A stretch of DNA of 63,851 nt, filler included, from Octopus bimaculoides (GCF_001194135.2; 7 parts of 6 records of this genome joined end to end with filler, not necessarily neighbours in it), one strand, 5' to 3'. Shown: positions 26,301 to 40,204, counted from the first letter of the whole stretch. Notes: generated by a model from the sequence alone, not told the origin. A program made the numbers and translations.

Positions 26301-28520
26301 CGCGGATCATGGAGTCTGGTCTCACTTATGGCTATGATTTCTAGTTTATGTGACTTTATGTCGTTTAGGAGGTACCCTTGTTTCCAAGGGGACCCCAAGC
26401 CACGCACATTTACACAACCAATCATGAGCATAATTCTGATGTGAGTGTTAAAATTTTGAAGACAGGAACAGAGAGTCACTTACCATTCGAGAGTTTTTGT
26501 GTCTCCTCTTTTGGGTTTTCTTCGAGATCACTGTACAGTTTTTTCGCCAGGTATTTTTGGCATTTGCCAACTGCCTTGGGAAAAATGGATTTTAGTGTGT
26601 GGTGCAGGGTTGGTGTTATGTGTAGAATTTTTATGTGTTCTGGCGGAGTTGTGTGCGGGTGGTTGCTGGTTTTTATGTTTCGTTTGTTTTTGTGTTGATG
26701 TATTCCATCAACTCTGAGTTTTTTGTGTTGATGGCAGTGAGCATTGTGTGTGTGTTTACTTTTGGGGTTTTGTTGCTTGTGTTGTTGTTGTGTGTGCTTG
26801 TGTTGGTGTCTGGAGTGTTTTCGGGAGTTGTGCATCTCCCTGCTTTGTTGGTGTTTGCTTTTCTTTTTTTGCTCCTCTTCCTCCTTCCTTTTTGGGCTAT
26901 TTGCTATTCCTCATTACTTTCGTCTTCCGATGAGAGTTCTGAGGAATCGGAAGTGGGTAAGGGCAAATTGTGAGCGTCTGTGTGTGTTTGTGTGAGTGGT
27001 TGTATTGCTGTTTTTGTTGGTGTTGGCTGCTTGTTATTTGTGTGAGGTGTATGTGATATGGGGGAGGGGGAGACAGTCTTGGAATTTTCTTTTTTTTCTC
27101 CTGTTTCCTCATTTGTTGCTCTTGCAGTTGCTGTTGTCTTCTCATTTGTCGGTGTTGCTGGTATTTCTCTTATTTTGAGTGTTGATGGTGATATTGGTAG
27201 TAGGGTTTTTTTCGTGGGTTTTGGTAGTTGCCCTTGTTTTTTTTGGTTTGTGACGGTTGGGCAACTGTCCTTGAGGTATGCCTCACTGCTGCATACATAA
27301 CAGCGTGGCTGCCTTCCTTCCACCACTACATACAACTTGTGGTCCTTTGCCAGTTGGATGTGTGTGGGGATCTTTTGGGACTCCTCTTCAGTGATGTGGA
27401 GGAGGACTTCAAGTTTTTTCCCCCCTTCCCAGTTTTTCTCCTCTGCAGTAGCAATTTCTAGTATATTTGCCTCCTCCATTTCGAGGCATATGGCAGATAT
27501 TATCCGTTGCGTCTCCACTTGTGAAGGCACATTCTTTACTGTCACCCTCTGTCCAAGATAACTCGGTATCATCACCAAGTCATCTGTGTGTAGAGAGAGT
27601 GTCGAAAAATTTCTTTGCTAAGTCTTCGCTCTGGAAGTGCACTTGAACGGTGGCGAACTTGCGCCCCCAAGTAACATGTGTTGATAGGGCCATATAGGTT
27701 TAAGACAAATTTCAATCTTTTTGGTGGTGAAATTTTTCGGTCGCTTGGTTTTCGTGTTGATCAGTCTGTATGTTATGTATTTCTTGTTTGTGTTTTCGAT
27801 TATTTCTTTTGGAATGTGTATTTGTACGGTGTCACCATCTTTCGTGAGAAGGGATTTTGTGCCTTTAATTTGTTTTGGGGTGAATATTATTATTGTTCTT
27901 TTTTTTTTAGTTGCATGGGCGAAATTTATTTTAGTGGTGCTGGCAGACATGTTTTTTGTAGCGGTTGTGGTGTTGTTTGTCTTGTTCATCTTATTGTAGT
28001 TGTTGATGGTGGTGTTGGTACTGCCAGGTTCAAAGGTGGTGGTAGTGGCAGCAGAGTTTGTTGAAGTAGTGGTGGTGTCGGTGTTGACGGCTGATGACCT
28101 GTTGTTGTTGTCACTGGTGGTGGTGCAAGGCGAGACTTCTCTAGCAGCAGAGTTTTTGGATGTGGTGAAGGTAGTAGTAGTAAACGCAGCATTCCTGGTT
28201 TCTACGTCTTGGGTTCGTTCATGTGGAACGACTTGCTTGTCAGTCTCCTTGCCTGCTATTAGAGGGAAATTGACCACGTGTAAAGGCCTAGCCATATTTG
28301 TTTTACGAAATATGGCAAATAAGTCGGAGAAAAAAAATTAAAACTTTTGGAAATAAACTCCAAAAGGAGCCACTTCCTATGACAAAAACAGAAATAGGGG
28401 CGAAGTGTATAGTCTTATACACCTCTTCCACAAGAAATATTTCAGAACTGCAAAATTTTTGTCAAATAAAAAGCCAACTTACTTGCGAGCCGATGTGACT
28501 AGCATCCGTCCAGATCGAGA
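23397..28520 (-). mobile_element. Tx1/L1-clade LINE, near full length, decayed
   Basis: ORF1 28295-~26480 has one in-frame TAG (27618-27620), a frameshift and a knuckle CYVCSSEAYLKDSC. ORF2 has an APE endonuclease (NVRGL...SETR, GDWN), RT (DQLKAFDRVDH, RQGYPLS, catalytic motif degraded to YPDV), a C-terminal CPRC..HTLVQC finger, and a stop at 25922. The 3' end is cut by an assembly join. Confidence 0.92.
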
Positions 28521-29095: not shown

Positions 29096-29404
29096 TTGTG
29101 GAAATCATTTGTTCACAGCAAACGTATTAGATCTATACTCAGCCAAGCATACAGCGTGAAAATTGTTTGTTACAGTATGTCACTATTTTGAAATGATGAT
29201 TTTCTTTTCTTGGAGAGTCGAAAAGGTGGGTTTCTGTAGAAAAAAAAAACAACCGAAAGTGGGTGCGATCGATGTCCTTTACCTCTGCCCCTAATTCCCA
29301 GCCCGGAAAAAAAAAAGTGGGTGGGGACAAGGAATTCGGGCACTTAGATATAATTAGCGATGTAAGTAAAATGTAACTGCTAGTCTTCGAAAGATATGCG
29401 TAAT

Positions 29405-29476: not shown

Positions 29477-30114
29477 GTAATTTTTCGTAAGGTGTGCCAT
29501 TGAGAAAGTCCCGCGATCCGCAGTTTGCCTCCGAACAAACTATGATATGTCAAATTTATTTACCTTTGTTTTAAATGGAGCGATCTGTTGTTAGCTAAGT
29601 AGTTTGAACGATAGCCTTTCTTACGTTATGTGAAACTAAATCTTATAACTTTTTTAGTTGTAGATTTCATGTGTTCTCGTATCGTTAGCGTTAGAGAGCT
29701 GAAAGCAAAACTCGGCTACCGCAGAAATAATGATGTTAACACACTGGCATGAGCTAGTTTGTTTGTGATATTTAATACATTTTTTATTTGTAGCAGGAAA
29801 ATAATATAGTAGACGGAAAACGAAAAAAATATACCTATGTATTTACAAAATTACATAAAATACATGGCAAATCCACGTGCTTCTATGTGTAACTTCCGTT
29901 TTACCCATAGTTCATCTCACAAAAAAGGAAGTTGTCCTTTCTCTTGAATCTGTGATCGGGATTGAACGGTATGTTACATTCGTTCAATCTATTAATGTAT
30001 TTCATTGTTTATTAAGCATCGTCGTAATATTTAATAATTTACATCTAAAGAACATCATCTAATATTTATTTTGTAATTTCTTTTCTAATAAATTTCAGTT
30101 AGTAACCCGAGAAA

Positions 30115-30131
30115 ATGTCTGATACTGAAAG
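30115..30131 (+). CDS. RPS12: 40S ribosomal protein S12, coding exon 1 (MSDTE + AG)
   Basis: Acceptor TTTCAG at 30098, ATG at 30115, donor AG|GTAGGT at 30131/30132. The phase-2 split joins in frame to the next exon. Confidence 0.8.
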
Positions 30132-30363: not shown

Positions 30364-30489
30364 GGAAGATGCCCCAGCTCCTGCTGGCTCGCTCGACTTA
30401 TACTCTGCCTTGCAGGAGATTTTAAAGACCTCTCTCATTCACGATGGCTTAGAAAGAGGACTCAGCCAGTGTTGTAAAGCACTAGACAA
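30364..30489 (+). CDS. RPS12: RPS12 coding exon 2 ([42 protein letters not shown])
   Basis: TTACAG acceptor and AA|GTATGT donor. The translation matches the eS12 motif ALQEVLKTALIHDGL.RG....KALDK. Confidence 0.95.
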
Positions 30490-30731: not shown

Positions 30732-30834
30732 ACGAAAAGCCCATTTGTGTATCTTGGCAAACAGTGTAGATGAACCCAGCTATACTAAACTAGTCGAAGC
30801 TCTCTGCACTGAACATGGTATCAACCTCCTCAAA
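30732..30834 (+). CDS. RPS12: RPS12 coding exon 3 ([34 protein letters not shown])
   Basis: CTAG acceptor, AAA|GTAAGA donor, 103 nt. Matches the eS12 motif AHLC.LA...DEP.Y.KLVEALC.EH.INL.K. Confidence 0.96.
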
Positions 30835-31945
30835 GTAAGAGCAATTATTTGTTTATTTGGTTTTAAAATTGATTTTAAAAATGTCTGATGAGTTTTTTTT
30901 TCTCTAATTGTGTCAGTTTTTTTGAGAGTAAAACCTGATGGATTTGTATAAAAACTTCAGGTTAAATTTTAGTTTGGTGTGTATGCATGGAAATATATAT
31001 ACACACGTCCGAGCCTGTCATGGCCAACCAACCCGTTGGAATGTAACTACTTTTTGGAAAATTCTCCCAGTTAACCAGTTTAAATATGAAAATTTAATTT
31101 ACCAATTTCTCTAATTGAATTGACTATGGAAACGGCTGTAGAGATAAGAATTTCATATATTGATTTAACTATCTTTGAATAAACTGCTCCATTTTCTTTT
31201 TCTCATTCATAAATAATTTAAACACCCATATCCATCATTGCAAAACTAACGTATTTAGCTTTTCACGGAACACTGGTAAAAACTGGAGGACTACGATGCA
31301 AACATCCCTAAAAGGATTATAGGTCCTTTGCATAATTATATATATGTGTGTGTATATATATATATATATAGCTGATATTTGCTTTTAACTTGTGATTCTA
31401 TGTGTTAAACAATTGGTTTGTAATATTTAATACCCCCCACCCTACCATAGCTGATATTAGTACTGCAATTACCTGTCCAGCCATAAATTTCTAATTGTTA
31501 AATTGCCTATACAAACTCACATTCTTTGTATTTTAAAGAGATGTCTACTATCGTCATCATAATACTTCCGCTTGGCATGTTATAGTATATCGCCCTCGTA
31601 ATTAGAACTCGTCTGTCATTGACAAATTTTTCTCACTAATCCGACGGTGAAGAAATACTTTATCAAAAATTGTCATGCAAGTTAATTAAGGAGTAACTTA
31701 CATTACCTGCAACAGATGTAAATTTATTCCAAATAACTTTTGTGATACGTTTCTTACTATTTGTTTTATGAGGTGGGCAAGTTACCTCCCTCACTTAAAC
31801 CGGCTACCTTCGATTAATAACTGGTATGCGATTTCATAATTCTTATGGATGTTTATTCAGCAAGATGATGATGATGATGAATGCAACACATCTTGTGAAA
31901 GGTTATACCTCCGTATAAGTAATGTTCCTTCCAAGGTGAAAGAAT

Positions 31946-32015
31946 TGTTGAGTATGATGATAATAAACGCTCCCTCTTTCTCAACCTCAAGTAAATTGTC
32001 ATGGCTTTGTGCTGG
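31946..32015 (+). pseudogene. Degenerate SNORD100-like copy (5'-most)
   Basis: ATGATGA at 31954-31960 followed, after an 8-nt spacer, by GCTCCCTCTT at 31969-31978. D' and D boxes are not intact. Confidence 0.55.
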
Positions 32016-32588
32016 GCAAACATTTTCTGCTTATAATAGCCTCGTGAAGATGAAAAATTACTGTTATGTTACTGGTTGTTAGACCATGCTAGTTGCATAT
32101 AGCTTCTGTTAATGTTTCGTTTTCAGTTTGCACATGTTCAAATTTCTGCAATAATCTGGCTAGGTGTATACAACCCGAAGCCCGTTGTGTGTCTGCAGGT
32201 GCTCTTGTCTAGTGGAAGTCATGGTTATAAATGAGCAATGTTACACAAGACAAGGTTATTCCAGCTGATTATGGGAATGTAACCTTAACTGGAAACTGCT
32301 GTGGGGTTGCAACAGGAAGAACATCCAGTTTTAGAAAATACTTCAGATATTCCATCTAACCCATGCAAGCATTGTAAGATGAACGTTTAATAAAGATTGG
32401 CTTCTCATTGGGGTTTTTTTGTCTTACATTTATATGTGAACCGTTTTTATTTTTACTAGTCATTGAATTTTATGTAATAAAATGTTTGTTTCACCCTTAC
32501 TCAAGTGATTGATACTGGTTTCTGTTGCTTCAAATATTCCCATTATTGGTGATAACTTGGCGGGGTGTTTCTTAACTATTACTGTAGT

Positions 32589-32657
32589 GTTGGATATGAT
32601 GACGATAAATGCTCCCTCTACTGAATATAGAATGAGGATTGCAGTGTCTGACCCAAT
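32589..32657 (+). ncRNA. SNORD100: Box C/D snoRNA, SNORD100-like (intact copy 1)
   Basis: Box C ATGATGA 32596-32602, guide ATGCTCCCTCT 32609-32619, D' CTGA 32621-32624, C' ATGAGGA 32632-32638, D CTGA 32648-32651, terminal stem TTGG/CCAA. The GCTCCCTCTA-CTGA core is recalled from human SNORD100, which guides 18S Gm436 and is hosted in RPS12. Confidence 0.85.
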
Positions 32658-33437
32658 TGTTGTTGAAAATGGTACAAAATGCTTGGAAGTTTGCTTAGCT
32701 TCAGGTCAGACCTGATTGATTTGACTTATAAATCAAAGATGGGTACTACTATAGCGTGTGATCTACAGTAGTATCAGTGAAATGGGTTAGTCTGTATGCT
32801 AAAGTATAAATGGCCAGGTAGATCAAGTGGTACCCAAGATGTTTGAACTGTAACTCTGGAACCTTATTAGAATTAAGAATTTAATTTTATAGTCAAAGAT
32901 ATTTGCATGATCTCTCACTATCAAGTAATTTCTACAATGGCCCCCAGACTTGATTGATGATTTTTGGGGTGATACTTTGAAAGGTAGAAATTATAAGGTG
33001 ACATGTTGGGTTTGTTGCTAGCTTCCCATCCTGTGTTTGCTTGCATCCCTATAACTTAGCGTTTTTGGCAAAAATAACCAATAGAATAGACCTTTTAGCA
33101 TTCACACTATCTGTCAAAAGAAATGCTTATTTATTTACACTATTGTGAATTACTTGTGCATTATTTTGTAGTTTGAGATTTTGATGAATTAACTATTAAT
33201 TTTTAGAATAATATTGTAGGCCTGGCCAGTTTGAACATAAAGCAAGTAGAATATTTTGGCAATGTATGACTGGTTTAAATGCAAAAGGGTTAAAGATAAC
33301 ACTGTCTTCAGCAGTTTTTGGGTAACTAATTGGCAGCAACTTACTTTGATACGTTCAGCATTTCCATTTTTGGAGATTCTCTACCTTGGTTGTTTTGCTT
33401 ATTTTTAAAAATCTTTTATACAATTGTATAAATCATG

Positions 33438-33497
33438 TGTTGGATATGATGCTCTCTTTAATGATGTATAATGTGGATTGCGATATCTGATCCAACA
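33438..33497 (+). pseudogene. Degenerate SNORD100-like copy
   Basis: Stem TGTTGGA/TCCAACA and D box CTGA retained. A 10-nt deletion fuses box C to the guide (ATGATGCTCTCTTTA); D' is ATGA and C' is ATGTGGA. Confidence 0.65.
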
Positions 33498-35011
33498 TAG
33501 AAAGTATTTTTGTTTGTGTGGTTGGGGTTGTTTAGCCCATGGTCAGTCTTCATTAAGTAAATCCACGATCAGAAATGCCCTGTTACTTTCGTTTGTGTTT
33601 TTTTATTGTATATGTGACTATTGTATTCTTACAGTAGTAGGATGGGATTTAAAGAAAGTTTTCCTATCCTTAGCAGGTCAAGCAACTACAGAACCTCTAC
33701 CATCGAGTTACATGGTTTTGTGTACTATCTATAGATAGAGGTACTAGAATTTCCCAATTTGGTGAAGTTTAAGGCCCAGTTGAGCTAATTGTAGAGTAAC
33801 AAAATCACTCATTNNNNNNNNNNNNNNNNNNNNNNNNNNNNNNNNNNNNNNNNNNNNNNNNNNNNNNNNNNNNNNNNNNNNNNNNNNNNNNNNNNNNNNN
33901 NNNNNNNNNNNNNNNNNNNNNNNNNNNNNNNNNNNNNNNNNNNNNNNNNNNNNNNNNNNNNNNNNNNNNNNNNNNNNNNNNNNNNNNNNNNNNNNNNNNN
34001 NNNNNNNNNNNNNNNNNNNNNNNNNNNNNNNNNNNNNNNNNNNNNNNNNNNNNNNNNNNNNNNNNNNNNNNNNNNNNNNNNNNNNNNNNNNNNNNNNNNN
34101 NNNNNNNNNNNNNNNNNNNNNNNNNNNNNNNNNNNNNNNNNNNNNNNNNNNNNNNNNNNNNNNNNNNNNNNNNNNNNNNNNNNNNNNNNNNNNNNNNNNN
34201 NNNNNNNNNNNNNNNNNNNNNNNNNNNNNNNNNNNNNNNNNNNNNNNNNNNNNNNNNNNNNNNNNNNNNNNNNNNNNNNNNNNNNNNNNNNNNNNNNNNN
34301 NNNNNNNNNNNNNNNNNNNNNNNNNNNNNNNNNNNNNNNNNNNNNNNNNNNNNNNNNNNNNNNNNNNNNNNNNNNNNNNNNNNNNNNNNNNNNNNNNNNN
34401 NNNNNNNNNNNNNNNNNNNNNNNNNNNNNNNCATTTAAATATGTCACAGGGTGAAAAATATTATTTTGCTTAGTGGAAAATGTGGAGAGATTCTCTTTTG
34501 CAAAAGAGATAATCTCACTGCAACACAGTTTTGTCTCTCAAATATTGCTTTCTTCTTGAACATAATTTATTCCATTCAGTGAATTTTTCACAAAGACAAT
34601 GGTAGTTACACAAGGTATCTGAATATTGGGACAGGCTAGTTGCTAGATGTTGGCTCCACTAACATTTTGTCTCCATATCTGATCCAGCATAGAAAGTATT
34701 TTTGTTTGTGTGGTTGGGGCTGTTTAGCCCATGGTCAGTCTTCATTAAGTAAATCCACGATCAGAAATGCCCTGTTACTTTCGTTTGTGTCTTTTTATTG
34801 TATATGTGACTAATGTATTCTTACAGTAGTAGGATGGGATTTAAAGAAGGTTTTGCTATCCTTAGCAGGTCAAGCAACTACAGAACCTCTACCATCGAGT
34901 TACATGGTTTTGTATAGATAGTTGTACTATCTATAGATAGAGGTACTAGAATTTCCCAATTTGGTGAAGTTTAAGGCCCAGTTGAGCTAATTGTAGAGTA
35001 ACAAAATCACT
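33483..35011. repeat. Local duplication block A (33483-33809) / A' (34675-35011)
   Basis: About 330 bp, near-identical, with scattered substitutions and a 10-nt indel. Confidence 0.95.
34675..34690 (+). pseudogene. 3' remnant of the 33438 SNORD100-like copy
   Basis: ATATCTGATCCAGCAT begins the duplicated block A'. Only the D box and 3' stem strand survive. Confidence 0.5.
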
Positions 35012-35461
35012 TTAGATGTATCTATTTCATTACATTTACATAAAGTTTATCTAAATTTTCTTTGAATATGTTACAAAAANNNNNNNNNNNNNNNNNNNNN
35101 NNNNNNNNNNNNNNNNNNNNNNNNNNNNNNNNNNNNNNNNNNNNNNNNNNNNNNNNNNNNNNNNNNNNNNNNNNNNNNNNNNNNNNNNNNNNNNNNNNNN
35201 NNNNNNNNNNNNNNNNNNNNNNNNNNNNNNNNNNNNNNNNNNNNNNNNNNNNNNNNNNNNNNNNNNNNNNNNNNNNNNNNNNNNNNNNNNNNNNNNNNNN
35301 NNNNNNNNNNNNNNNNNNNNNNNNNNNNNNNNNNNNNNNNNNNNNNNNNNNNNNNNNNNNNNNNNNNNNNNNNNNNNNNNNNTTTTTTTTTTTTTTTTTT
35401 TTTTTCCCCTGATATGTAACATTGTTCATGGTTGAAGGATTGTTTTATACTATGTAATATG

Positions 35462-35531
35462 GTTGGATATGATGAAGCTAAATGCTCCCTCTTCTGAAAT
35501 ATCTATTGAGGATTGCAATAACTGACCCAAC
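35462..35531 (+). ncRNA. SNORD100: Box C/D snoRNA, SNORD100-like (intact copy 2)
   Basis: Box C ATGATGA 35469-35475, guide ATGCTCCCTCT 35482-35492, D' CTGA 35494-35497, C' TTGAGGA, D CTGA 35522-35525, stem GTTGG/CCAAC. Spacers have diverged from copy 1 while the boxes and guide are conserved. Confidence 0.85.
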
Positions 35532-36478
35532 TGTATTTTGTTACCCCCAAGTTTTCAACCATGAAGTGAAGCATTTAAATATGTCACAGGGTGAAAAATA
35601 TTATTTTGCTTAGTGGAAAATGTGGAGAGATTCTCTTTTGCAAAATAGATAATCTCACTGCAACACAGTTTTGTCTCTCAAATATTGCTTTCTTCTTGAA
35701 CATAATTTATTCCATTCAGTGAATTTTACACAAGGTATCTGAATATTGGGGCAGGCTAGTAGCTAGATGTTGGCTCCACTAACATTTTGTCTTCATTTTC
35801 ATCACTGGAAACTTTTTACTTAATTCACATGGCCTCAATCTAAAACATATATAGATAGGGTGAGATTCAGCTGAAGTTTCTAGTAAGTTATGCTTTGTTT
35901 TCATACATGTGTTGTGTCTGAAGTACTTGAATAATCCAATCTGGTGATATTAGTGATCATTAGGTCTAACCTAGCTAAAACATGCCGTCCTTATATTTTA
36001 CTCCTTATTTCTATATAGGTTCACTTACTTGCCTCCTCCTGTTTGGTAATGTTCTGGTTGTAATATTTTAAACTATGGAGTTGTTTGGGTGGGATGAAAG
36101 ATGCTCTCTTTACTGAAATACTTTTTGAGGGTTATAGTAACTAGCCCAGTTGATGCGAAGAAGTGTACAAAATTGGTATTGCCTGTAGAAACAGTAAGAC
36201 TGATATTTAAACCGTTATTCAGCTTAAGTGAAATGTAATGCTTATTCATAATTTCGAGAATATGATATTGTGATTGTTTAAAATGACATTGTAAGGTGGG
36301 TGAGATAAGCACGATCTTGTCAGTTTGAACATAAAACAGAATATTTGGGCTGGAAATAGGTTTAAATGCTAAAAGATTCAATCAAAATTGACTTTTGTGA
36401 AAATAGTTGTTTACTAATTTTTTGAACTTTGCTAATTTTATAGATATTAACACATTGAAATTTTGTCTTTCTTTTTAG

Positions 36479-36580
36479 GTTGAAGACAGCAAGAAATTAG
36501 GCGAATGGGCTGGTCTTCGTCGTATTGATGTTGAAGGTAAAGCCAGAAAAGTGAATGGATGTGGCTGTGTTGTTGTAAAG
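36479..36580 (+). CDS. RPS12: RPS12 coding exon 4 ([34 protein letters not shown])
   Basis: TTTTAG acceptor, AAG|GTAATG donor, 102 nt, phase 0. Matches the KKLGEW.GL..ID.EGK.RKV.GC.CVVVK motif. Confidence 0.96.
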
Positions 36581-37744
36581 GTAATGCAATCTATTCTAAC
36601 AAATATATTGACCCTCTTTTGGAAATTTCTTTTAAATACTGTTTTATAAGCAGTGGCTTCATGGGTTATGAAGTTTCAAGGAGGTGTTGGATAGATAACT
36701 AGGTATTTTTATTTGAAACACTGATCTATTTGCAACCCCAGAGTCCTGTGGTTGTGAAGTGAACTCCTTGACCTGAAAGCCATGATTTTGTTCATTTTAA
36801 TTGAGAGAGGGAAAATTTGTTTCTCTTACTTTAGAGAATTGAATTTTAGTGAAGAATTGCCTTTGATGTCATGATTGAAATAGTTTGCCCAAAAATAATT
36901 GAAAGATGATTTTAGAAAGTAAATGAATTTCCTGGAATTCATCAGTTATTAGATATTGAGTTGCTTTTATTGTTTTGTATATAGTCTTGATAAGAATATG
37001 TAATGTTGATTTCAAATTTTGCACAAAGCCAGCAATTTCGGAGGAGGGGTGAGTGAATTACATTGACGCTCAGTACTCAACTGGTACTTATTTTACCAAC
37101 TCTGAAAATATGAGAGGCAAAGTTGATCTTGGTGAAATTTCAACTCAATGTGGAGATGGATGAAATGCTACCAAGCATTTTGTCCAGCATGCTAACAGTT
37201 CTGCCAGCTCGCCTCTTTGTTGGTTATGTAATGTTGAAAGAAGTGAAGTACTTGAAATATACAAAGATACGACTTCCTTGCAGGTTAAATCTGCAATACT
37301 GTCTTAACATTACTCATCCAATTGTTGAGTATTTTAGCTCCCTCTGACCTTAGGTTCTTGTATTGTGAATTGAACAAAAGACTAGTGACTCTTGGTTAAA
37401 TACTTTATTCTTGAACATACTATGACTTATTTTCTATTGCATAAGCATAAAGCAAGTCCTATTTAACATATGAACAAGGCAGAATTTAACATGTTGGGAG
37501 TTGTGAATAACTTCTTGTAACTTCAGTTTTCTTCTGGCCCTTGAGGAAGGTACAGCCTAAATACTAATATTGTCAAGAGGTAGGTATGATGGATATGTGC
37601 TGGCTCTTAAAACTTGTAGCATAGTGATATCTCCTTAAAACAACACATTGCTTTGAAGACGTTGATAGTTGGCAATATGTAATGTGTATTTGAAGTACTG
37701 AGCTTTTACTAGAAAGTAATAACGCTACATAGCAGAAGTAAAGT

Positions 37745-39215
37745 TTACAATAGACGGATATTTGTCCTCATCTTGTTTGTTGTTAACACGTTTCGGCTTA
37801 TATACCCTCCAACCTTCATCAGTTATCTTGGGGGAATTTCGAATCTGCGTTCTCATTCCTAAGGTATTTTTCGATGTTATTATTCAGGTTACTGCCTGGA
37901 ATCAAACTTCGGAATCTTGGGGTTGGTAGCCCGCACTCTAAACCGCTACGCCATATGCCCGTGGGAAATTATGGAGTGAATTTTAGTGCTTATAAGTCTG
38001 ATATTTTCCTATCCTTCCTTAATACCGGTTCCCATATGCAACTCATATCTGCTTAGGAGGTTGTTGTGTCTTAGCATATGTGCTGCTGTATTTTAGTTTT
38101 CATATTTTCCAGTGGTGTTCTCTTTTTAACTTCATCCCACAGGAGGAGGTGATCTCCATTTTTCCATACATGATCAGCTGTACCCGATTTATCAATATCT
38201 CCTCATGTCAGCTTTGCCATGTTCATCTACCCTTATTGAGGGGGCAGCATGTTTCGACTTTGTATAACCTACCACAGCTGCATAGCATGGAGTACATCCT
38301 TTTTTGATCATATTCTCTTCTATCGGTGGTTTTACTCTGAGATATTTGCAATGTGTTGTATTACTCTTGAATACTGTCCTGATGTCATTGGGACCACGCA
38401 TCTTTTCGGAGAGGCCTTTCACATAGGGTGGCCAGACTGTAGACAGTTTATTGGTTTCATCCCCTCTTCATAATTGGAGTGGATAGTATGCTTTTGGGGT
38501 AGTTGCTGCTTGATAGATTATTGAGCTCGACCGTTTCTTTGTGGTATCACGATCGCTATTTATATTCTTTGCATGATGTTTTAGGCACTGAGTGATCCCT
38601 CTCTTTACACTGTATGGATGGTGGGAATTGAAGTTGAGGTATTGTCCAAGGAAAGTCGGGCTTGCGGTATACAGATGTCCTGAATCCATGCTTGGTGCAT
38701 GTTATCAATACGTCTAGGAATGCTAGCTGATTGTCTTTTTCCTTTTCCATTGTGAACTGTGTGGATGGCTTCATTGAGTTCACATAATCTAACAGCACTT
38801 GGACATCTTCCTGGTTGGGCCAGAGTATAAAGGTGTCATCAACATATATTACAGTCTTAGGATTGGTTTTAGTGGTGTTGATCCTGAAGCTGCATTATCA
38901 AAGTATTCCATCATCATCATCATTTAACGTCCGCTTTCCATGCTAGCATATATATATATATATATTGGCTATTATCGGTGATAATGGCGAACCCATAGCT
39001 AAACCCTCTGCTGTCGATATATATCAGTGTCCATACTGAAGTAGGTAGTTTCTACACAGAAGGTCAACATTTCCATCAAGTTTCTTATTGGTATACAAGT
39101 GCGTTCTTTTAGATGGGTGTCTGTCACTAGTTTTTCTTGAATCACCGATAGTGCTTCACCAGATGGTGAGTCTAGATTCAATGGGGGTATCCTTGATGAA
39201 TTCTGTCTGAATAAT
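37745..39215 (-). mobile_element. Penelope-like element (RT + GIY-YIG + 3' pLTR), frameshifted, antisense in RPS12 intron 5
   Basis: Minus-strand peptides LTFCVETTYF, GLAMGSPLSPIIAN, YVDDTFILW, FTMEKEKDNQLAFLDVLI, YLNFNSHHP and MYSMLCSCGRLYKVETC. The 3' region has a tRNA-like segment and a hammerhead. An RTE tail plus (TA)n is inserted at ~38910-38966. Confidence 0.88.
37784..37828 (-). ncRNA. Decayed hammerhead motif of the same family as 12043-12088
   Basis: The minus strand reads GATAA-CTGATGA-AGGTTGGAGGGTATATAAGCC-GAAA-CGTGTTAAC. A 3-nt deletion removes the U-H cleavage site. Confidence 0.55.
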
Positions 39216-40141: not shown

Positions 40142-40204
40142 GACTATGGAAAAGAATCACAAGCACTTGATGTTTTGAATGAATATTTCAAGTCCAAGAA
40201 ATAA
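40142..40204 (+). CDS. RPS12: RPS12 last coding exon (DYGKESQALDVLNEYFKSKK*)
   Basis: TTTCAG acceptor at 40141, TAA at 40202-40204. The joined CDS is 17+126+103+102+63 = 411 nt, or 136 aa with no internal stop. Confidence 0.96.
   Translation, partial: DYGKESQALDVLNEYFKSKK

What the first reader, a model, noticed from the sequence alone, without database searches (positions are those of the whole stretch)
31946..35531. Several copies of one snoRNA in a single RPS12 intron: possible sno-lncRNA or polycistronic processing
Intron 4 (5.6 kb) holds two intact SNORD100-like genes 2.9 kb apart plus decayed copies. The vertebrate norm is one snoRNA per intron, released by exonucleolytic trimming. With two snoRNPs in one intron, trimming from both ends would leave a ~2.9-kb RNA capped by C/D structures, as in human sno-lncRNAs, unless an endonuclease or extra splicing separates them. 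Neither copy lies at the usual short distance from the annotated acceptor: copy 2 ends ~950 nt upstream. The two intact copies differ throughout their spacers, so they are paralogs rather than alleles.
Basis: partly seen in the sequence, partly recalled or inferred. Interest (0 to 1): 0.78.

Follow-up and report, generated by a model that had tools for sequence, protein, structure and literature searches.

The report
Octopus RPS12 intron holds several SNORD100 copies
One intron of the Octopus bimaculoides ribosomal protein S12 gene carries a small family of copies of one rRNA-methylation guide RNA (SNORD100): two look intact, probably a third is hidden in an assembly gap, and several are decayed. 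The same multi-copy layout occurs in other octopuses, scallop, mussel and abalone, so it is a real but fairly ordinary intronic snoRNA cluster.

Summary
RPS12 intron 4 (30835-36478, + strand) holds two intact box C/D SNORD100-like genes: c1 at 32589-32657 and c2 at 35462-35531. It also holds decayed copies at 31946, 33438 and 36085, a 3' fragment at 34677, and a relic in intron 5 at 37320.

The window is Octopus bimaculoides, a mollusc, so the "vertebrate norm" does not apply. Gap-free assemblies of O. vulgaris and O. sinensis do not collapse the region. They show three intact and four decayed copies in intron 4, plus one intact copy in intron 5. Argonauta has five copies in intron 4, scallop nine, mussel six, abalone three to four, and cuttlefish one.

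c1 and c2 differ at 1 of 52 box, guide and stem positions but at 13 of 18 spacer positions. Both are more conserved between Octopus species than the surrounding intron. Both therefore look like functional paralogs.

In all seven sequenced cases, the block that starts at the right edge of gap 1 follows an intact copy by 40 nt. Gap 1 therefore very probably hides a third copy, and the predicted single ~2.9-kb species is unlikely.

Whether sno-lncRNAs form cannot be tested here. Selection on interior copies of the arrays favours release of individual snoRNAs. This is a new member of a known kind, the intronic snoRNA cluster.

The parts
30732..30834 (+). RPS12 exon 4 (codes ...[34 protein letters not shown]), followed by a GT donor
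   Evidence: tblastn and spliced translation give a 136-aa protein. The protein is identical to Octopus RPS12.
30835..36478 (+). RPS12 intron 4, host of the SNORD100 copies. It is the orthologous intron (phase 0, between K and V) in cuttlefish, Argonauta, scallop, mussel and abalone.
31946..31990 (+). c0, a decayed copy. The C box and guide (AAACGCTCCCTCT) are kept, while D', C' and D are lost. Its 5' stem type (TTGAGT) is the type still intact in Argonauta.
   Evidence: (16.4 bits)
32589..32657 (+). c1, an intact box C/D SNORD100-like gene
   Evidence: Rfam SNORD100 at 29 bits, E 0.024. Ortholog profile at 37.5 bits, E 2.6e-10. Orthologs lie at L012 5773-5841 and L011 5742-5810, at 91% identity against about 82% for the flanks.
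33438..33497 (+). c3, a decayed copy. An 11-nt deletion joins the C box to the guide, the guide is GCTCTCTTT, and D' is lost. The D box and terminal stem are kept.
   Evidence: Its ortholog in O. vulgaris has a destroyed C box.
33483..33813 (+). Block P, 95% identical to P' (34677-35011). It runs into gap 1.
   Evidence: it matches L012 6615-6943
33814..34431 (.). Assembly gap 1 (618 N, length estimated). It is predicted to hide a third intact c2-type copy ending about 40 nt before 34432.
   Evidence: Inference. Block Q starts exactly at the gap edge. In all seven sequenced instances (window Q', three in L012, three in L011), Q starts 40 nt after an intact c2-type copy.
34432..34676 (+). Block Q, 90% identical to Q' (35572-35796)
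34677..35079 (+). The 3' fragment of a decayed copy (atatctgatccagca, 34677-34692) fused directly to block Q, followed by block P'
35080..35382 (.). Assembly gap 2 (303 N). The equivalent stretch in O. vulgaris is only about 40-60 nt, next to a T homopolymer.
35462..35531 (+). c2, an intact box C/D SNORD100-like gene. The terminal helix can extend to 11 bp (AAUAUGGUUGG/CCAACUGUAUU).
   Evidence: (34.6 bits, E 2.1e-9). It is 69/70 identical to L012 c2b, against about 88% for the flanks.
35572..35796 (+). Block Q', starting 40 nt downstream of c2
36085..36151 (+). c5, a decayed copy. The C box is GGGATGA, the guide is GCTCTCTTT, C' is TGAGGG and D is CTAG.
   Evidence: (12.3 bits)
36479..36580 (+). 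RPS12 exon 5
37320..37350 (+). Relic of a c0-type copy in intron 5 (aattgttgagtattttagctccctctgacc)
   Evidence: its ortholog lies at L012 9816-9846

Best explanation
RPS12 intron 4 of Octopus bimaculoides carries a small birth-and-death family of SNORD100 genes. SNORD100 is the box C/D guide for 2'-O-methylation of the conserved 18S site that is G436 in human.

The ancestral single intron-4 gene, still single in cuttlefish, was amplified by tandem or segmental DNA duplication before Octopus and Argonauta split. Some copies stayed under purifying selection: c1, c2, and very probably a third copy hidden in gap 1. Others decayed: c0, c3, c5, the 34677 fragment and the intron-5 relic.

Inferred mechanism: all copies are transcribed as part of the RPS12 pre-mRNA. 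Each intact copy assembles its own C/D snoRNP on its C/D kink-turn and terminal stem. The mature ~65-70-nt snoRNAs are then released from the excised intron by exonuclease trimming. Cuts between the copies are probably needed as well, as in the intronic or polycistronic snoRNA clusters of plants, yeast and Drosophila. RNAs spanning two copies (sno-lncRNA-like, about 1.0-1.4 kb rather than 2.9 kb) may occur as intermediates or by-products.

Shown: the copies, their intactness or decay, their conservation, and the multi-copy state in gap-free relatives. Inferred: host-dependent expression, the way the copies are separated, and the hidden copy.
For: Species and locus
- The window is identical to the O. 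bimaculoides GCA_001194135.2 locus, gaps included. The RPS12 protein is identical in three Octopus species.

Identity as SNORD100
- The guide plus D' box (GCUCCCUCUACUGA) matches the Rfam SNORD100 consensus exactly.
- A profile built from 12 non-window orthologs gives E 2.6e-10 for c1 and 2.1e-9 for c2.
- The host gene is the known one from sponge to human, and the intron has the same number as in mouse (PMC3412847, PMC10287158).

Both copies are under constraint
- c1 and c2 differ at 1 of 52 box, guide and stem positions against 13 of 18 spacer positions (Fisher p = 2e-9).
- Their flanks are unrelated.
- c1 is 91% and c2 99% identical to their O. vulgaris orthologs, against 82-88% for the intron. 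Decayed copies sit at 83-85%, the flank rate.
- Across 16 cephalopod copies, all boxes and the guide are invariant. The terminal stem covaries: G-C changes to A-T at one pair, and A.C, G-C and A-T occur at another.

Not an assembly artefact
- Gap-free O. vulgaris and O. sinensis have three intact and four decayed copies in intron 4 and one intact copy in intron 5. Argonauta has five.

A recurrent arrangement
- Copies per intron 4: scallop 9, mussel 6, abalone 3-4. A nemertean has four tandem copies in intron 5.
- Within these arrays the snoRNA cores are 86-100% identical while the flanks are mostly below 60%. Interior copies are therefore maintained.

Orientation
- All copies in all species lie on the host sense strand.
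Against: - No RNA data were available. Expression of any copy, the processing route and the methylation of 18S are all untested.
- Rfam's SNORD100 gathering score is not reached: 29 bits against 58.
- The Octopus 18S sequence was not on hand, so guide-target pairing rests on the known conservation of the site.
- The high identity among array copies in bivalves could partly reflect gene conversion or recent duplication rather than selection on each copy.
- No copy lies at the ~70-80-nt distance from the 3' splice site that favours splicing-coupled assembly in mammals. Efficiency of snoRNP assembly is therefore unknown. Only c2-type copies have an extended (11-bp) terminal helix, and fold z-scores are not significant.
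Confidence: 0.72

Rival explanations
1. sno-lncRNA factory. The excised intron is trimmed from both ends only. Stable long RNAs capped at both ends by SNORD100 snoRNPs then accumulate and have a function of their own, as in the human 15q11-q13 and mouse Rpl13a sno-lncRNAs.
For: The prerequisite, at least two snoRNA genes in one intron, is met. In mammals this arrangement is sufficient to produce sno-lncRNAs (PMC4234469, PMC11028025). The multi-copy state has persisted since before the Octopus-Argonauta split.
Against: - The sequence between copies is no better conserved than the rest of the intron (82-88%).
- That sequence is structurally unstable between species, with block duplications, deletions and decayed copies.
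- Fox-type (U)GCAUG motifs are not enriched.
- Interior copies of arrays of 4-9 in other molluscs are maintained, which is hard to explain if only long RNAs were made.
- The predicted 2.9-kb size is probably wrong because of a hidden copy in gap 1.
- No RNA evidence is available either way.
Confidence: 0.25
2. Assembly artefact. The apparent extra copies and repeated blocks come from haplotype duplication or mis-scaffolding around the two gaps, and the real intron has a single SNORD100 gene.
For: Both gaps are flanked by repeated blocks: P/P' at 95% and Q/Q' at 90% identity. The gap lengths are clearly wrong.
Against: - c1 and c2 lie in unique, unrelated flanks, and each has its own ortholog in two gap-free congener assemblies. 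Those assemblies hold even more copies.
- The middle contig contains a Q-to-P' junction that cannot arise from a single unit, and no repeat is shared at the junction.
- A divergence of 5-10% between the blocks is far above allelic level (inference).
Confidence: 0.03
3. One snoRNA per intron after all. Unannotated exons, or recursive or alternative splicing, subdivide intron 4 so that each intact copy is released from its own smaller intron.
For: In mammals, alternative splicing changes which snoRNAs share an intron (PMC4234469). A pyrimidine-rich stretch followed by AG lies about 20 nt downstream of c2.
Against: - Extra exons in a 136-aa ribosomal protein mRNA would disrupt the reading frame.
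- No conserved exon-like block was seen between copies in the Octopus comparison.
- The candidate AG is too close to c2 for a branch point outside the snoRNA.
- This was not tested with RNA data.
Confidence: 0.1
4. Only one copy is functional. The other apparently intact copy or copies are young pseudogenes that have not yet accumulated box mutations, or are not assembled into snoRNPs because they lie too far from the branch point.
For: Four or five copies in the same intron have decayed, so copy loss is frequent. O. bimaculoides lost the intron-5 copy that its congeners retain.
Against: c1 and c2 are old: 13 of 18 spacer positions differ and the flanks are unalignable. Yet they are identical at all boxes and the guide. 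Each is also conserved above flank level between Octopus species.
Confidence: 0.12

Closest known systems
SNORD100 (HBII-429, Rfam RF00609) in RPS12 introns of metazoans
   Same: - Box C/D architecture.
- The guide GCUCCCUCU followed by a D' box is identical to the family consensus.
- The host gene is RPS12, and the intron number is the same as in mouse (intron 4; PMC10287158).
- Residence in RPS12 is conserved from sponges to human, and the predicted target is 18S G436 (PMC3412847).
   Different: - It is shorter than the vertebrate model because the 3' half lacks about 12 nt. It therefore scores 29 bits against a gathering score of 58.
- It is present in several copies per intron instead of one.
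- It lies 0.9-3.8 kb from the 3' splice site.
Intronic snoRNA gene clusters (first described in rice, then Drosophila)
   Same: Several snoRNA genes lie in one host intron, all in the host orientation, and are presumably co-transcribed and then separated (PMC2780460, PMC11028025).
   Different: Here the cluster consists of paralogs of a single snoRNA mixed with pseudogenes. It lies in a ribosomal protein gene of a cephalopod. Processing has not been studied in this phylum.
Mammalian sno-lncRNAs (15q11-q13 SNORD116 pairs; mouse Rpl13a SNORD33/34)
   Same: Two box C/D snoRNA genes share one intron, about 1-2 kb apart. This is the stated prerequisite for sno-lncRNA formation (PMC4234469).
   Different: No RNA evidence exists here. 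The internal sequence is neither conserved nor enriched for Fox motifs. The host is a highly expressed protein-coding gene. More than two intact copies are likely.
SNORD100 arrays in RPS12 of other lophotrochozoans
   Same: The snoRNA, the host gene and, in molluscs, the intron are the same. Copy numbers are Mizuhopecten 9, Mytilus 6, Haliotis 3-4, Argonauta 5, and O. vulgaris and O. sinensis 3 plus 1.
   Different: The bivalve and nemertean arrays are regular and nearly all intact. The Octopus array is irregular and half decayed. I know of no publication describing these arrays; the paper searches found none.

Membership tests
Box C/D snoRNA | C box RUGAUGA near the 5' end and D box CUGA near the 3' end | tested here: met
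   c1: ATGATGA 32596-32602 and CTGA 32648-32651. c2: ATGATGA 35469-35475 and CTGA 35522-35525. The decayed copies fail this test.
Box C/D snoRNA | Short terminal stem bringing the C and D boxes together | tested here: met
   The stem is GTTGG/CCAAT in c1 and GTTGG/CCAAC in c2, 5 bp in the MFE folds. The stem covaries among 11 cephalopod copies, for example G-C to A-T.
Box C/D snoRNA | Internal D' and C' boxes | tested here: met
   D' CTGA and C' TGAGGA are present in both copies and invariant in Octopus.
Box C/D snoRNA | Antisense element of at least 9-10 nt ending next to the D or D' box and complementary to rRNA | tested here: inconclusive
   The guide is identical to the Rfam SNORD100 guide, and the target site is reported as conserved from sponge to human (PMC3412847).
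Box C/D snoRNA | Stable ~60-100-nt RNA bound by fibrillarin, Nop56, Nop58 and 15.5K | not testable with these tools
   No RNA or protein-binding data were available.
SNORD100 (RF00609) | Score at or above the Rfam gathering threshold (58 bits) | tested here: not met
   c1 scores 29.0 bits (E 0.024). c2 is best matched by clan-mate snoR30 at 24.6 bits. The model consensus carries a longer 3' half that cephalopod copies lack.
SNORD100 (RF00609) | Guide GCUCCCUCU placed upstream of D', so that the 5th paired nucleotide is the 18S G equivalent to human G436 | tested here: met
   There is an exact match to the consensus GCUCCCUCUACUGA. The same element occurs in all orthologs collected.
SNORD100 (RF00609) | Location in an RPS12 intron, sense strand | tested here: met
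   The copies lie in intron 4 of RPS12. The same intron hosts the copy in cuttlefish, Argonauta, scallop, mussel and abalone. Mouse Snord100 is also in intron 4 (PMC10287158).
SNORD100 (RF00609) | Detectable homology to orthologs from other animals | tested here: met
   An nhmmer profile from 12 orthologs, none from the window, gives 37.5 and 34.6 bits, E 2.6e-10 and 2.1e-9.
sno-lncRNA | Two snoRNA genes within one spliced intron | tested here: met
   c1 and c2 are both in intron 4 of the gene model. Unannotated exons cannot be excluded.
sno-lncRNA | A stable, uncapped, non-polyadenylated RNA whose ends are the two snoRNAs | not testable with these tools
   No RNA data were available.
Intronic snoRNA cluster | At least two snoRNA genes in one host intron in host orientation | tested here: met
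Intronic snoRNA cluster | Each gene yields its own mature snoRNA | not testable with these tools
   Support is indirect only: purifying selection on both copies and on interior copies of arrays in other molluscs.

The most novel reading that the evidence does not exclude
Octopod RPS12 intron 4, with three intact SNORD100 genes spaced about 1.3 and 0.9 kb apart in O. vulgaris, produces stable snoRNA-ended long RNAs. These would be the first sno-lncRNAs outside mammals. They would come from one of the most highly transcribed genes of the cell, and the arrangement has been maintained since before the Octopus-Argonauta split.
Probability: 0.2. Interest if true: 0.6.

Novelty: new member of a known kind. 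Interest (0 to 1): 0.36.

Why it matters
SNORD100 in RPS12 is one of the oldest snoRNA-host pairings in animals. It is a turnover-prone array: copies are born by segmental duplication, some are kept under selection and others decay.

This gives a natural series of 1, 3, 5, 6 and 9 copies per intron in which to ask how animals outside vertebrates release several snoRNAs from one intron, and whether snoRNA-ended long RNAs exist outside mammals.

For genome annotation, it is a caution that the draft O. bimaculoides assembly under-counts copies and over-sizes its gaps here.

Tried and rejected
- **Rfam at gathering thresholds.** It found nothing in the piece. Only the E-value mode showed SNORD100 or clan hits.
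- **MAFFT alignment of orthologs.** It mis-aligned the D boxes. I replaced it with a box-anchored alignment and an nhmmer profile. Two earlier script attempts failed on a wrong C' pattern.
- **Direct look-up of the spliced window protein.** The locus was reached through the cluster member P0121 instead.
- **Extended external stems.** They exist for c2-type copies (an 11-bp helix), but fold z-scores are not significant and c1 has none. They are not used as evidence of function.
- **Fox-motif enrichment between copies.** None was found.
- **Retroposition as the copying mechanism.** Copies share flanking blocks and lie in tandem, which fits DNA-level duplication. The only hint of retroposition is an A9 run after the intron-5 copy of O. 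vulgaris, and I did not pursue it.
- **Heterobranch gastropods.** Aplysia and Biomphalaria RPS12 loci have no SNORD100-like hit.
- **Logan cluster members P0124 and P0125.** They are cuttlefish-like proteins and give no information on Octopus transcripts.
- **Literature searches.** Searches for cephalopod snoRNAs or for multi-copy snoRNAs in one intron in molluscs found nothing specific.
Full report
**What is there**

The piece carries a complete RPS12 gene on the + strand. Its coding exons lie at 30115-30131, 30364-30489, 30732-30834, 36479-36580 and 40142-40204, with GT-AG introns and a 136-aa product. A TOP-like start near 29937 suggests a non-coding exon 1.

The protein is identical to RPS12 of Octopus vulgaris, O. 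sinensis and O. bimaculoides. The window is base-for-base the O. bimaculoides GCA_001194135.2 locus, including both N runs. The organism is therefore a cephalopod mollusc, not a vertebrate.

**The copies**

Rfam at gathering thresholds finds nothing. At relaxed thresholds, SNORD100 is the best family for 32589-32657 (29 bits against a gathering score of 58, E 0.024). Weaker hits fall at 33439 and 31947, and the clan-mate snoR30 hits 35462.

Read directly, c1 (32589-32657) and c2 (35462-35531) each have:
- a C box ATGATGA;
- the guide AAATGCTCCCTCT followed, one base later, by a D' box CTGA;
- a C' box TGAGGA;
- a D box CTGA;
- a 5-bp terminal stem.

The guide plus D' box matches the SNORD100 consensus exactly. 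A profile I built only from orthologs of other species scores c1 at 37.5 bits (E 2.6e-10) and c2 at 34.6 bits (E 2.1e-9).

The other copies are decayed:
- c0 (31946-31990) keeps only the C box and guide.
- c3 (33438-33497) has an 11-nt deletion and a mutated guide.
- c5 (36085-36151) has mutated C, C' and D boxes and the same mutated guide as c3.
- A 3' fragment lies at 34677-34692.
- A relic lies in intron 5 at 37320-37350.

All copies are on the RPS12 sense strand, and none lies elsewhere in the 25-kb piece. The 2.9 kb does, however, include 921 N of estimated length.

**Are both intact copies functional paralogs?**

c1 and c2 share no flanking similarity. Within the gene they differ at 1 of 52 box, guide and stem positions. 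That one change turns a G.U pair into G-C. They differ at 13 of 18 spacer positions (Fisher p = 2e-9). The partition follows standard C/D anatomy but was applied after seeing the sequences.

Each copy has its own ortholog in O. vulgaris and O. sinensis. c1 is 91% identical and c2 69/70 identical, against 82-88% for the surrounding intron. Decayed copies sit at the flank rate of 83-85%.

Across 16 copies from five cephalopods, every box, the guide and the TTGCA after C' are invariant, while spacers vary. The terminal stem covaries, for example G-C to A-T.

**The gaps and the artefact question**

Both gaps are bordered by repeated blocks:
- P (33483-33813) and P' (34677-35011) are 95% identical.
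- Q (34432-34676) and Q' (35572-35796) are 90% identical.

Gap-free assemblies of O. vulgaris (L012) and O. sinensis (L011) are collinear with the window on both sides of both gaps, in the same order and orientation. Far from collapsing, they hold more copies. Intron 4 holds three intact copies (c1, c2a, c2b) and four decayed ones. Intron 5 holds one more intact copy.

O. bimaculoides lacks the intron-5 copy. An inversion breakpoint lies at that position.

The middle contig (34432-35079) contains a Q-to-P' junction that a single unit cannot produce. At least two P-copy-Q units must therefore exist.

Block Q starts exactly at the right edge of gap 1. In all seven sequenced instances (the window's Q', three in L012 and three in L011), Q begins 40 nt after an intact c2-type copy. 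Gap 1 therefore very probably hides a third intact copy.

Gap 2 corresponds to only about 40-60 nt in O. vulgaris, beside a T homopolymer. The true c1-to-c2 distance is likely about 2.2-2.3 kb, with another snoRNA in between.

**Comparative picture**

Copies of SNORD100 in RPS12 intron 4 unless noted:

| Species | Copies |
|---|---|
| Cuttlefish | 1 (660-nt intron), plus a decayed copy in intron 5 |
| Argonauta | 5, of two subtypes; one subtype matches the decayed c0 of Octopus |
| Haliotis | 3-4 |
| Mytilus | 6, plus a half copy in intron 5 |
| Mizuhopecten | 9 |
| Tubulanus (nemertean) | 4, in a 132-nt tandem array in intron 5 |
| Amphioxus | 1, in an upstream intron |
| Aplysia, Biomphalaria | none detected |

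Within the scallop, mussel and abalone arrays, the snoRNA cores are 86-100% identical while flanks are mostly below 60%. Interior copies are therefore maintained, by selection, gene conversion or both.

**How it most likely works**

Four things are known from the literature:
- SNORD100 resides in RPS12 from sponges to human and is predicted to guide methylation of 18S G436 (PMC3412847).
- In mouse it lies in intron 4 (PMC10287158).
- Animals mostly, but not always, follow one snoRNA per intron, and intronic clusters are a described organisation (PMC2780460, PMC11028025).
- Two snoRNAs in one intron are the prerequisite for sno-lncRNAs (PMC4234469).

The strict sense orientation of every copy in every species argues for expression from the host pre-mRNA. 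The maintenance of several copies, including interior ones, argues that individual snoRNAs are released, which needs cuts between them. This is inference, because no RNA data were available.

RNAs spanning two copies may exist as intermediates or by-products. Nothing in the inter-copy sequence suggests a function of its own. It is not better conserved, it is structurally unstable, and it shows no Fox-motif enrichment.

**Verdict**

- Real paralogs in one intron: yes.
- An exception to a vertebrate rule: not applicable.
- A single 2.9-kb sno-lncRNA: unlikely as stated.
- sno-lncRNA against cluster processing: undecided, with indirect evidence favouring release of individual snoRNAs.

This is a new member of a known kind, an intronic snoRNA cluster of SNORD100 paralogs. 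It is of moderate interest, mainly as a comparative series for studying how multi-snoRNA introns are processed outside vertebrates.

Noticed in passing
window 37442-38543 (RPS12 intron 5); L012 9938-10991: About 0.8-1.1 kb of intron 5 is inverted between O. bimaculoides and O. vulgaris/O. sinensis. One breakpoint lies exactly where the congeners carry an intact intron-5 SNORD100 copy plus part of block Q, followed by an A9 run. O. bimaculoides lacks that copy.
   Followed up: partly
window 35080-35405: Gap 2 (303 N) abuts a run of 23 T. The equivalent stretch in O. vulgaris is only about 40-60 nt, so the gap length is over-estimated and the homopolymer probably broke the assembly.
   Followed up: partly
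L001 (Acanthosepion pharaonis) 7218-7262, minus strand: A type I hammerhead ribozyme hit lies above Rfam's gathering score (44.2 bits against 34), a few kb upstream of the cuttlefish RPS12 coding exons and next to a long CT/TA/GA simple repeat.
   Followed up: no
window 29185-29260: A weak C/D-like match to the Drosophila snoMe18S-C1367 family (22.5 bits, E 4.3) lies about 700 nt upstream of the putative RPS12 start. It is probably chance.
   Followed up: no
window 23397-26500, minus strand: LINE-like retrotransposon reading frames (endonuclease and reverse-transcriptase-like ORFs of 185-377 aa) are interrupted by assembly gaps at 23826-23835 and 24965-25488.
   Followed up: no
L008 (Tubulanus polymorphus) 3210-3674: Four SNORD100-like copies form a perfect 132-nt tandem array in RPS12 intron 5, with only about 64 nt between genes and a D' box reading CCTA.
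   Followed up: partly
L003/L002 (Haliotis) exon hits: Residues 80-136 of RPS12 are encoded in one block in abalone. The intron that separates exons 5 and 6 in cephalopods and bivalves is therefore absent there.
   Followed up: no
L001 17215-17270: Cuttlefish RPS12 intron 5 (182 nt) contains a decayed SNORD100 paralog: C box ATGATAA, guide GCTCCCCCT, D box TTGA. Duplication into intron 5 followed by decay therefore also happened in the decapodiform lineage.
   Followed up: partly
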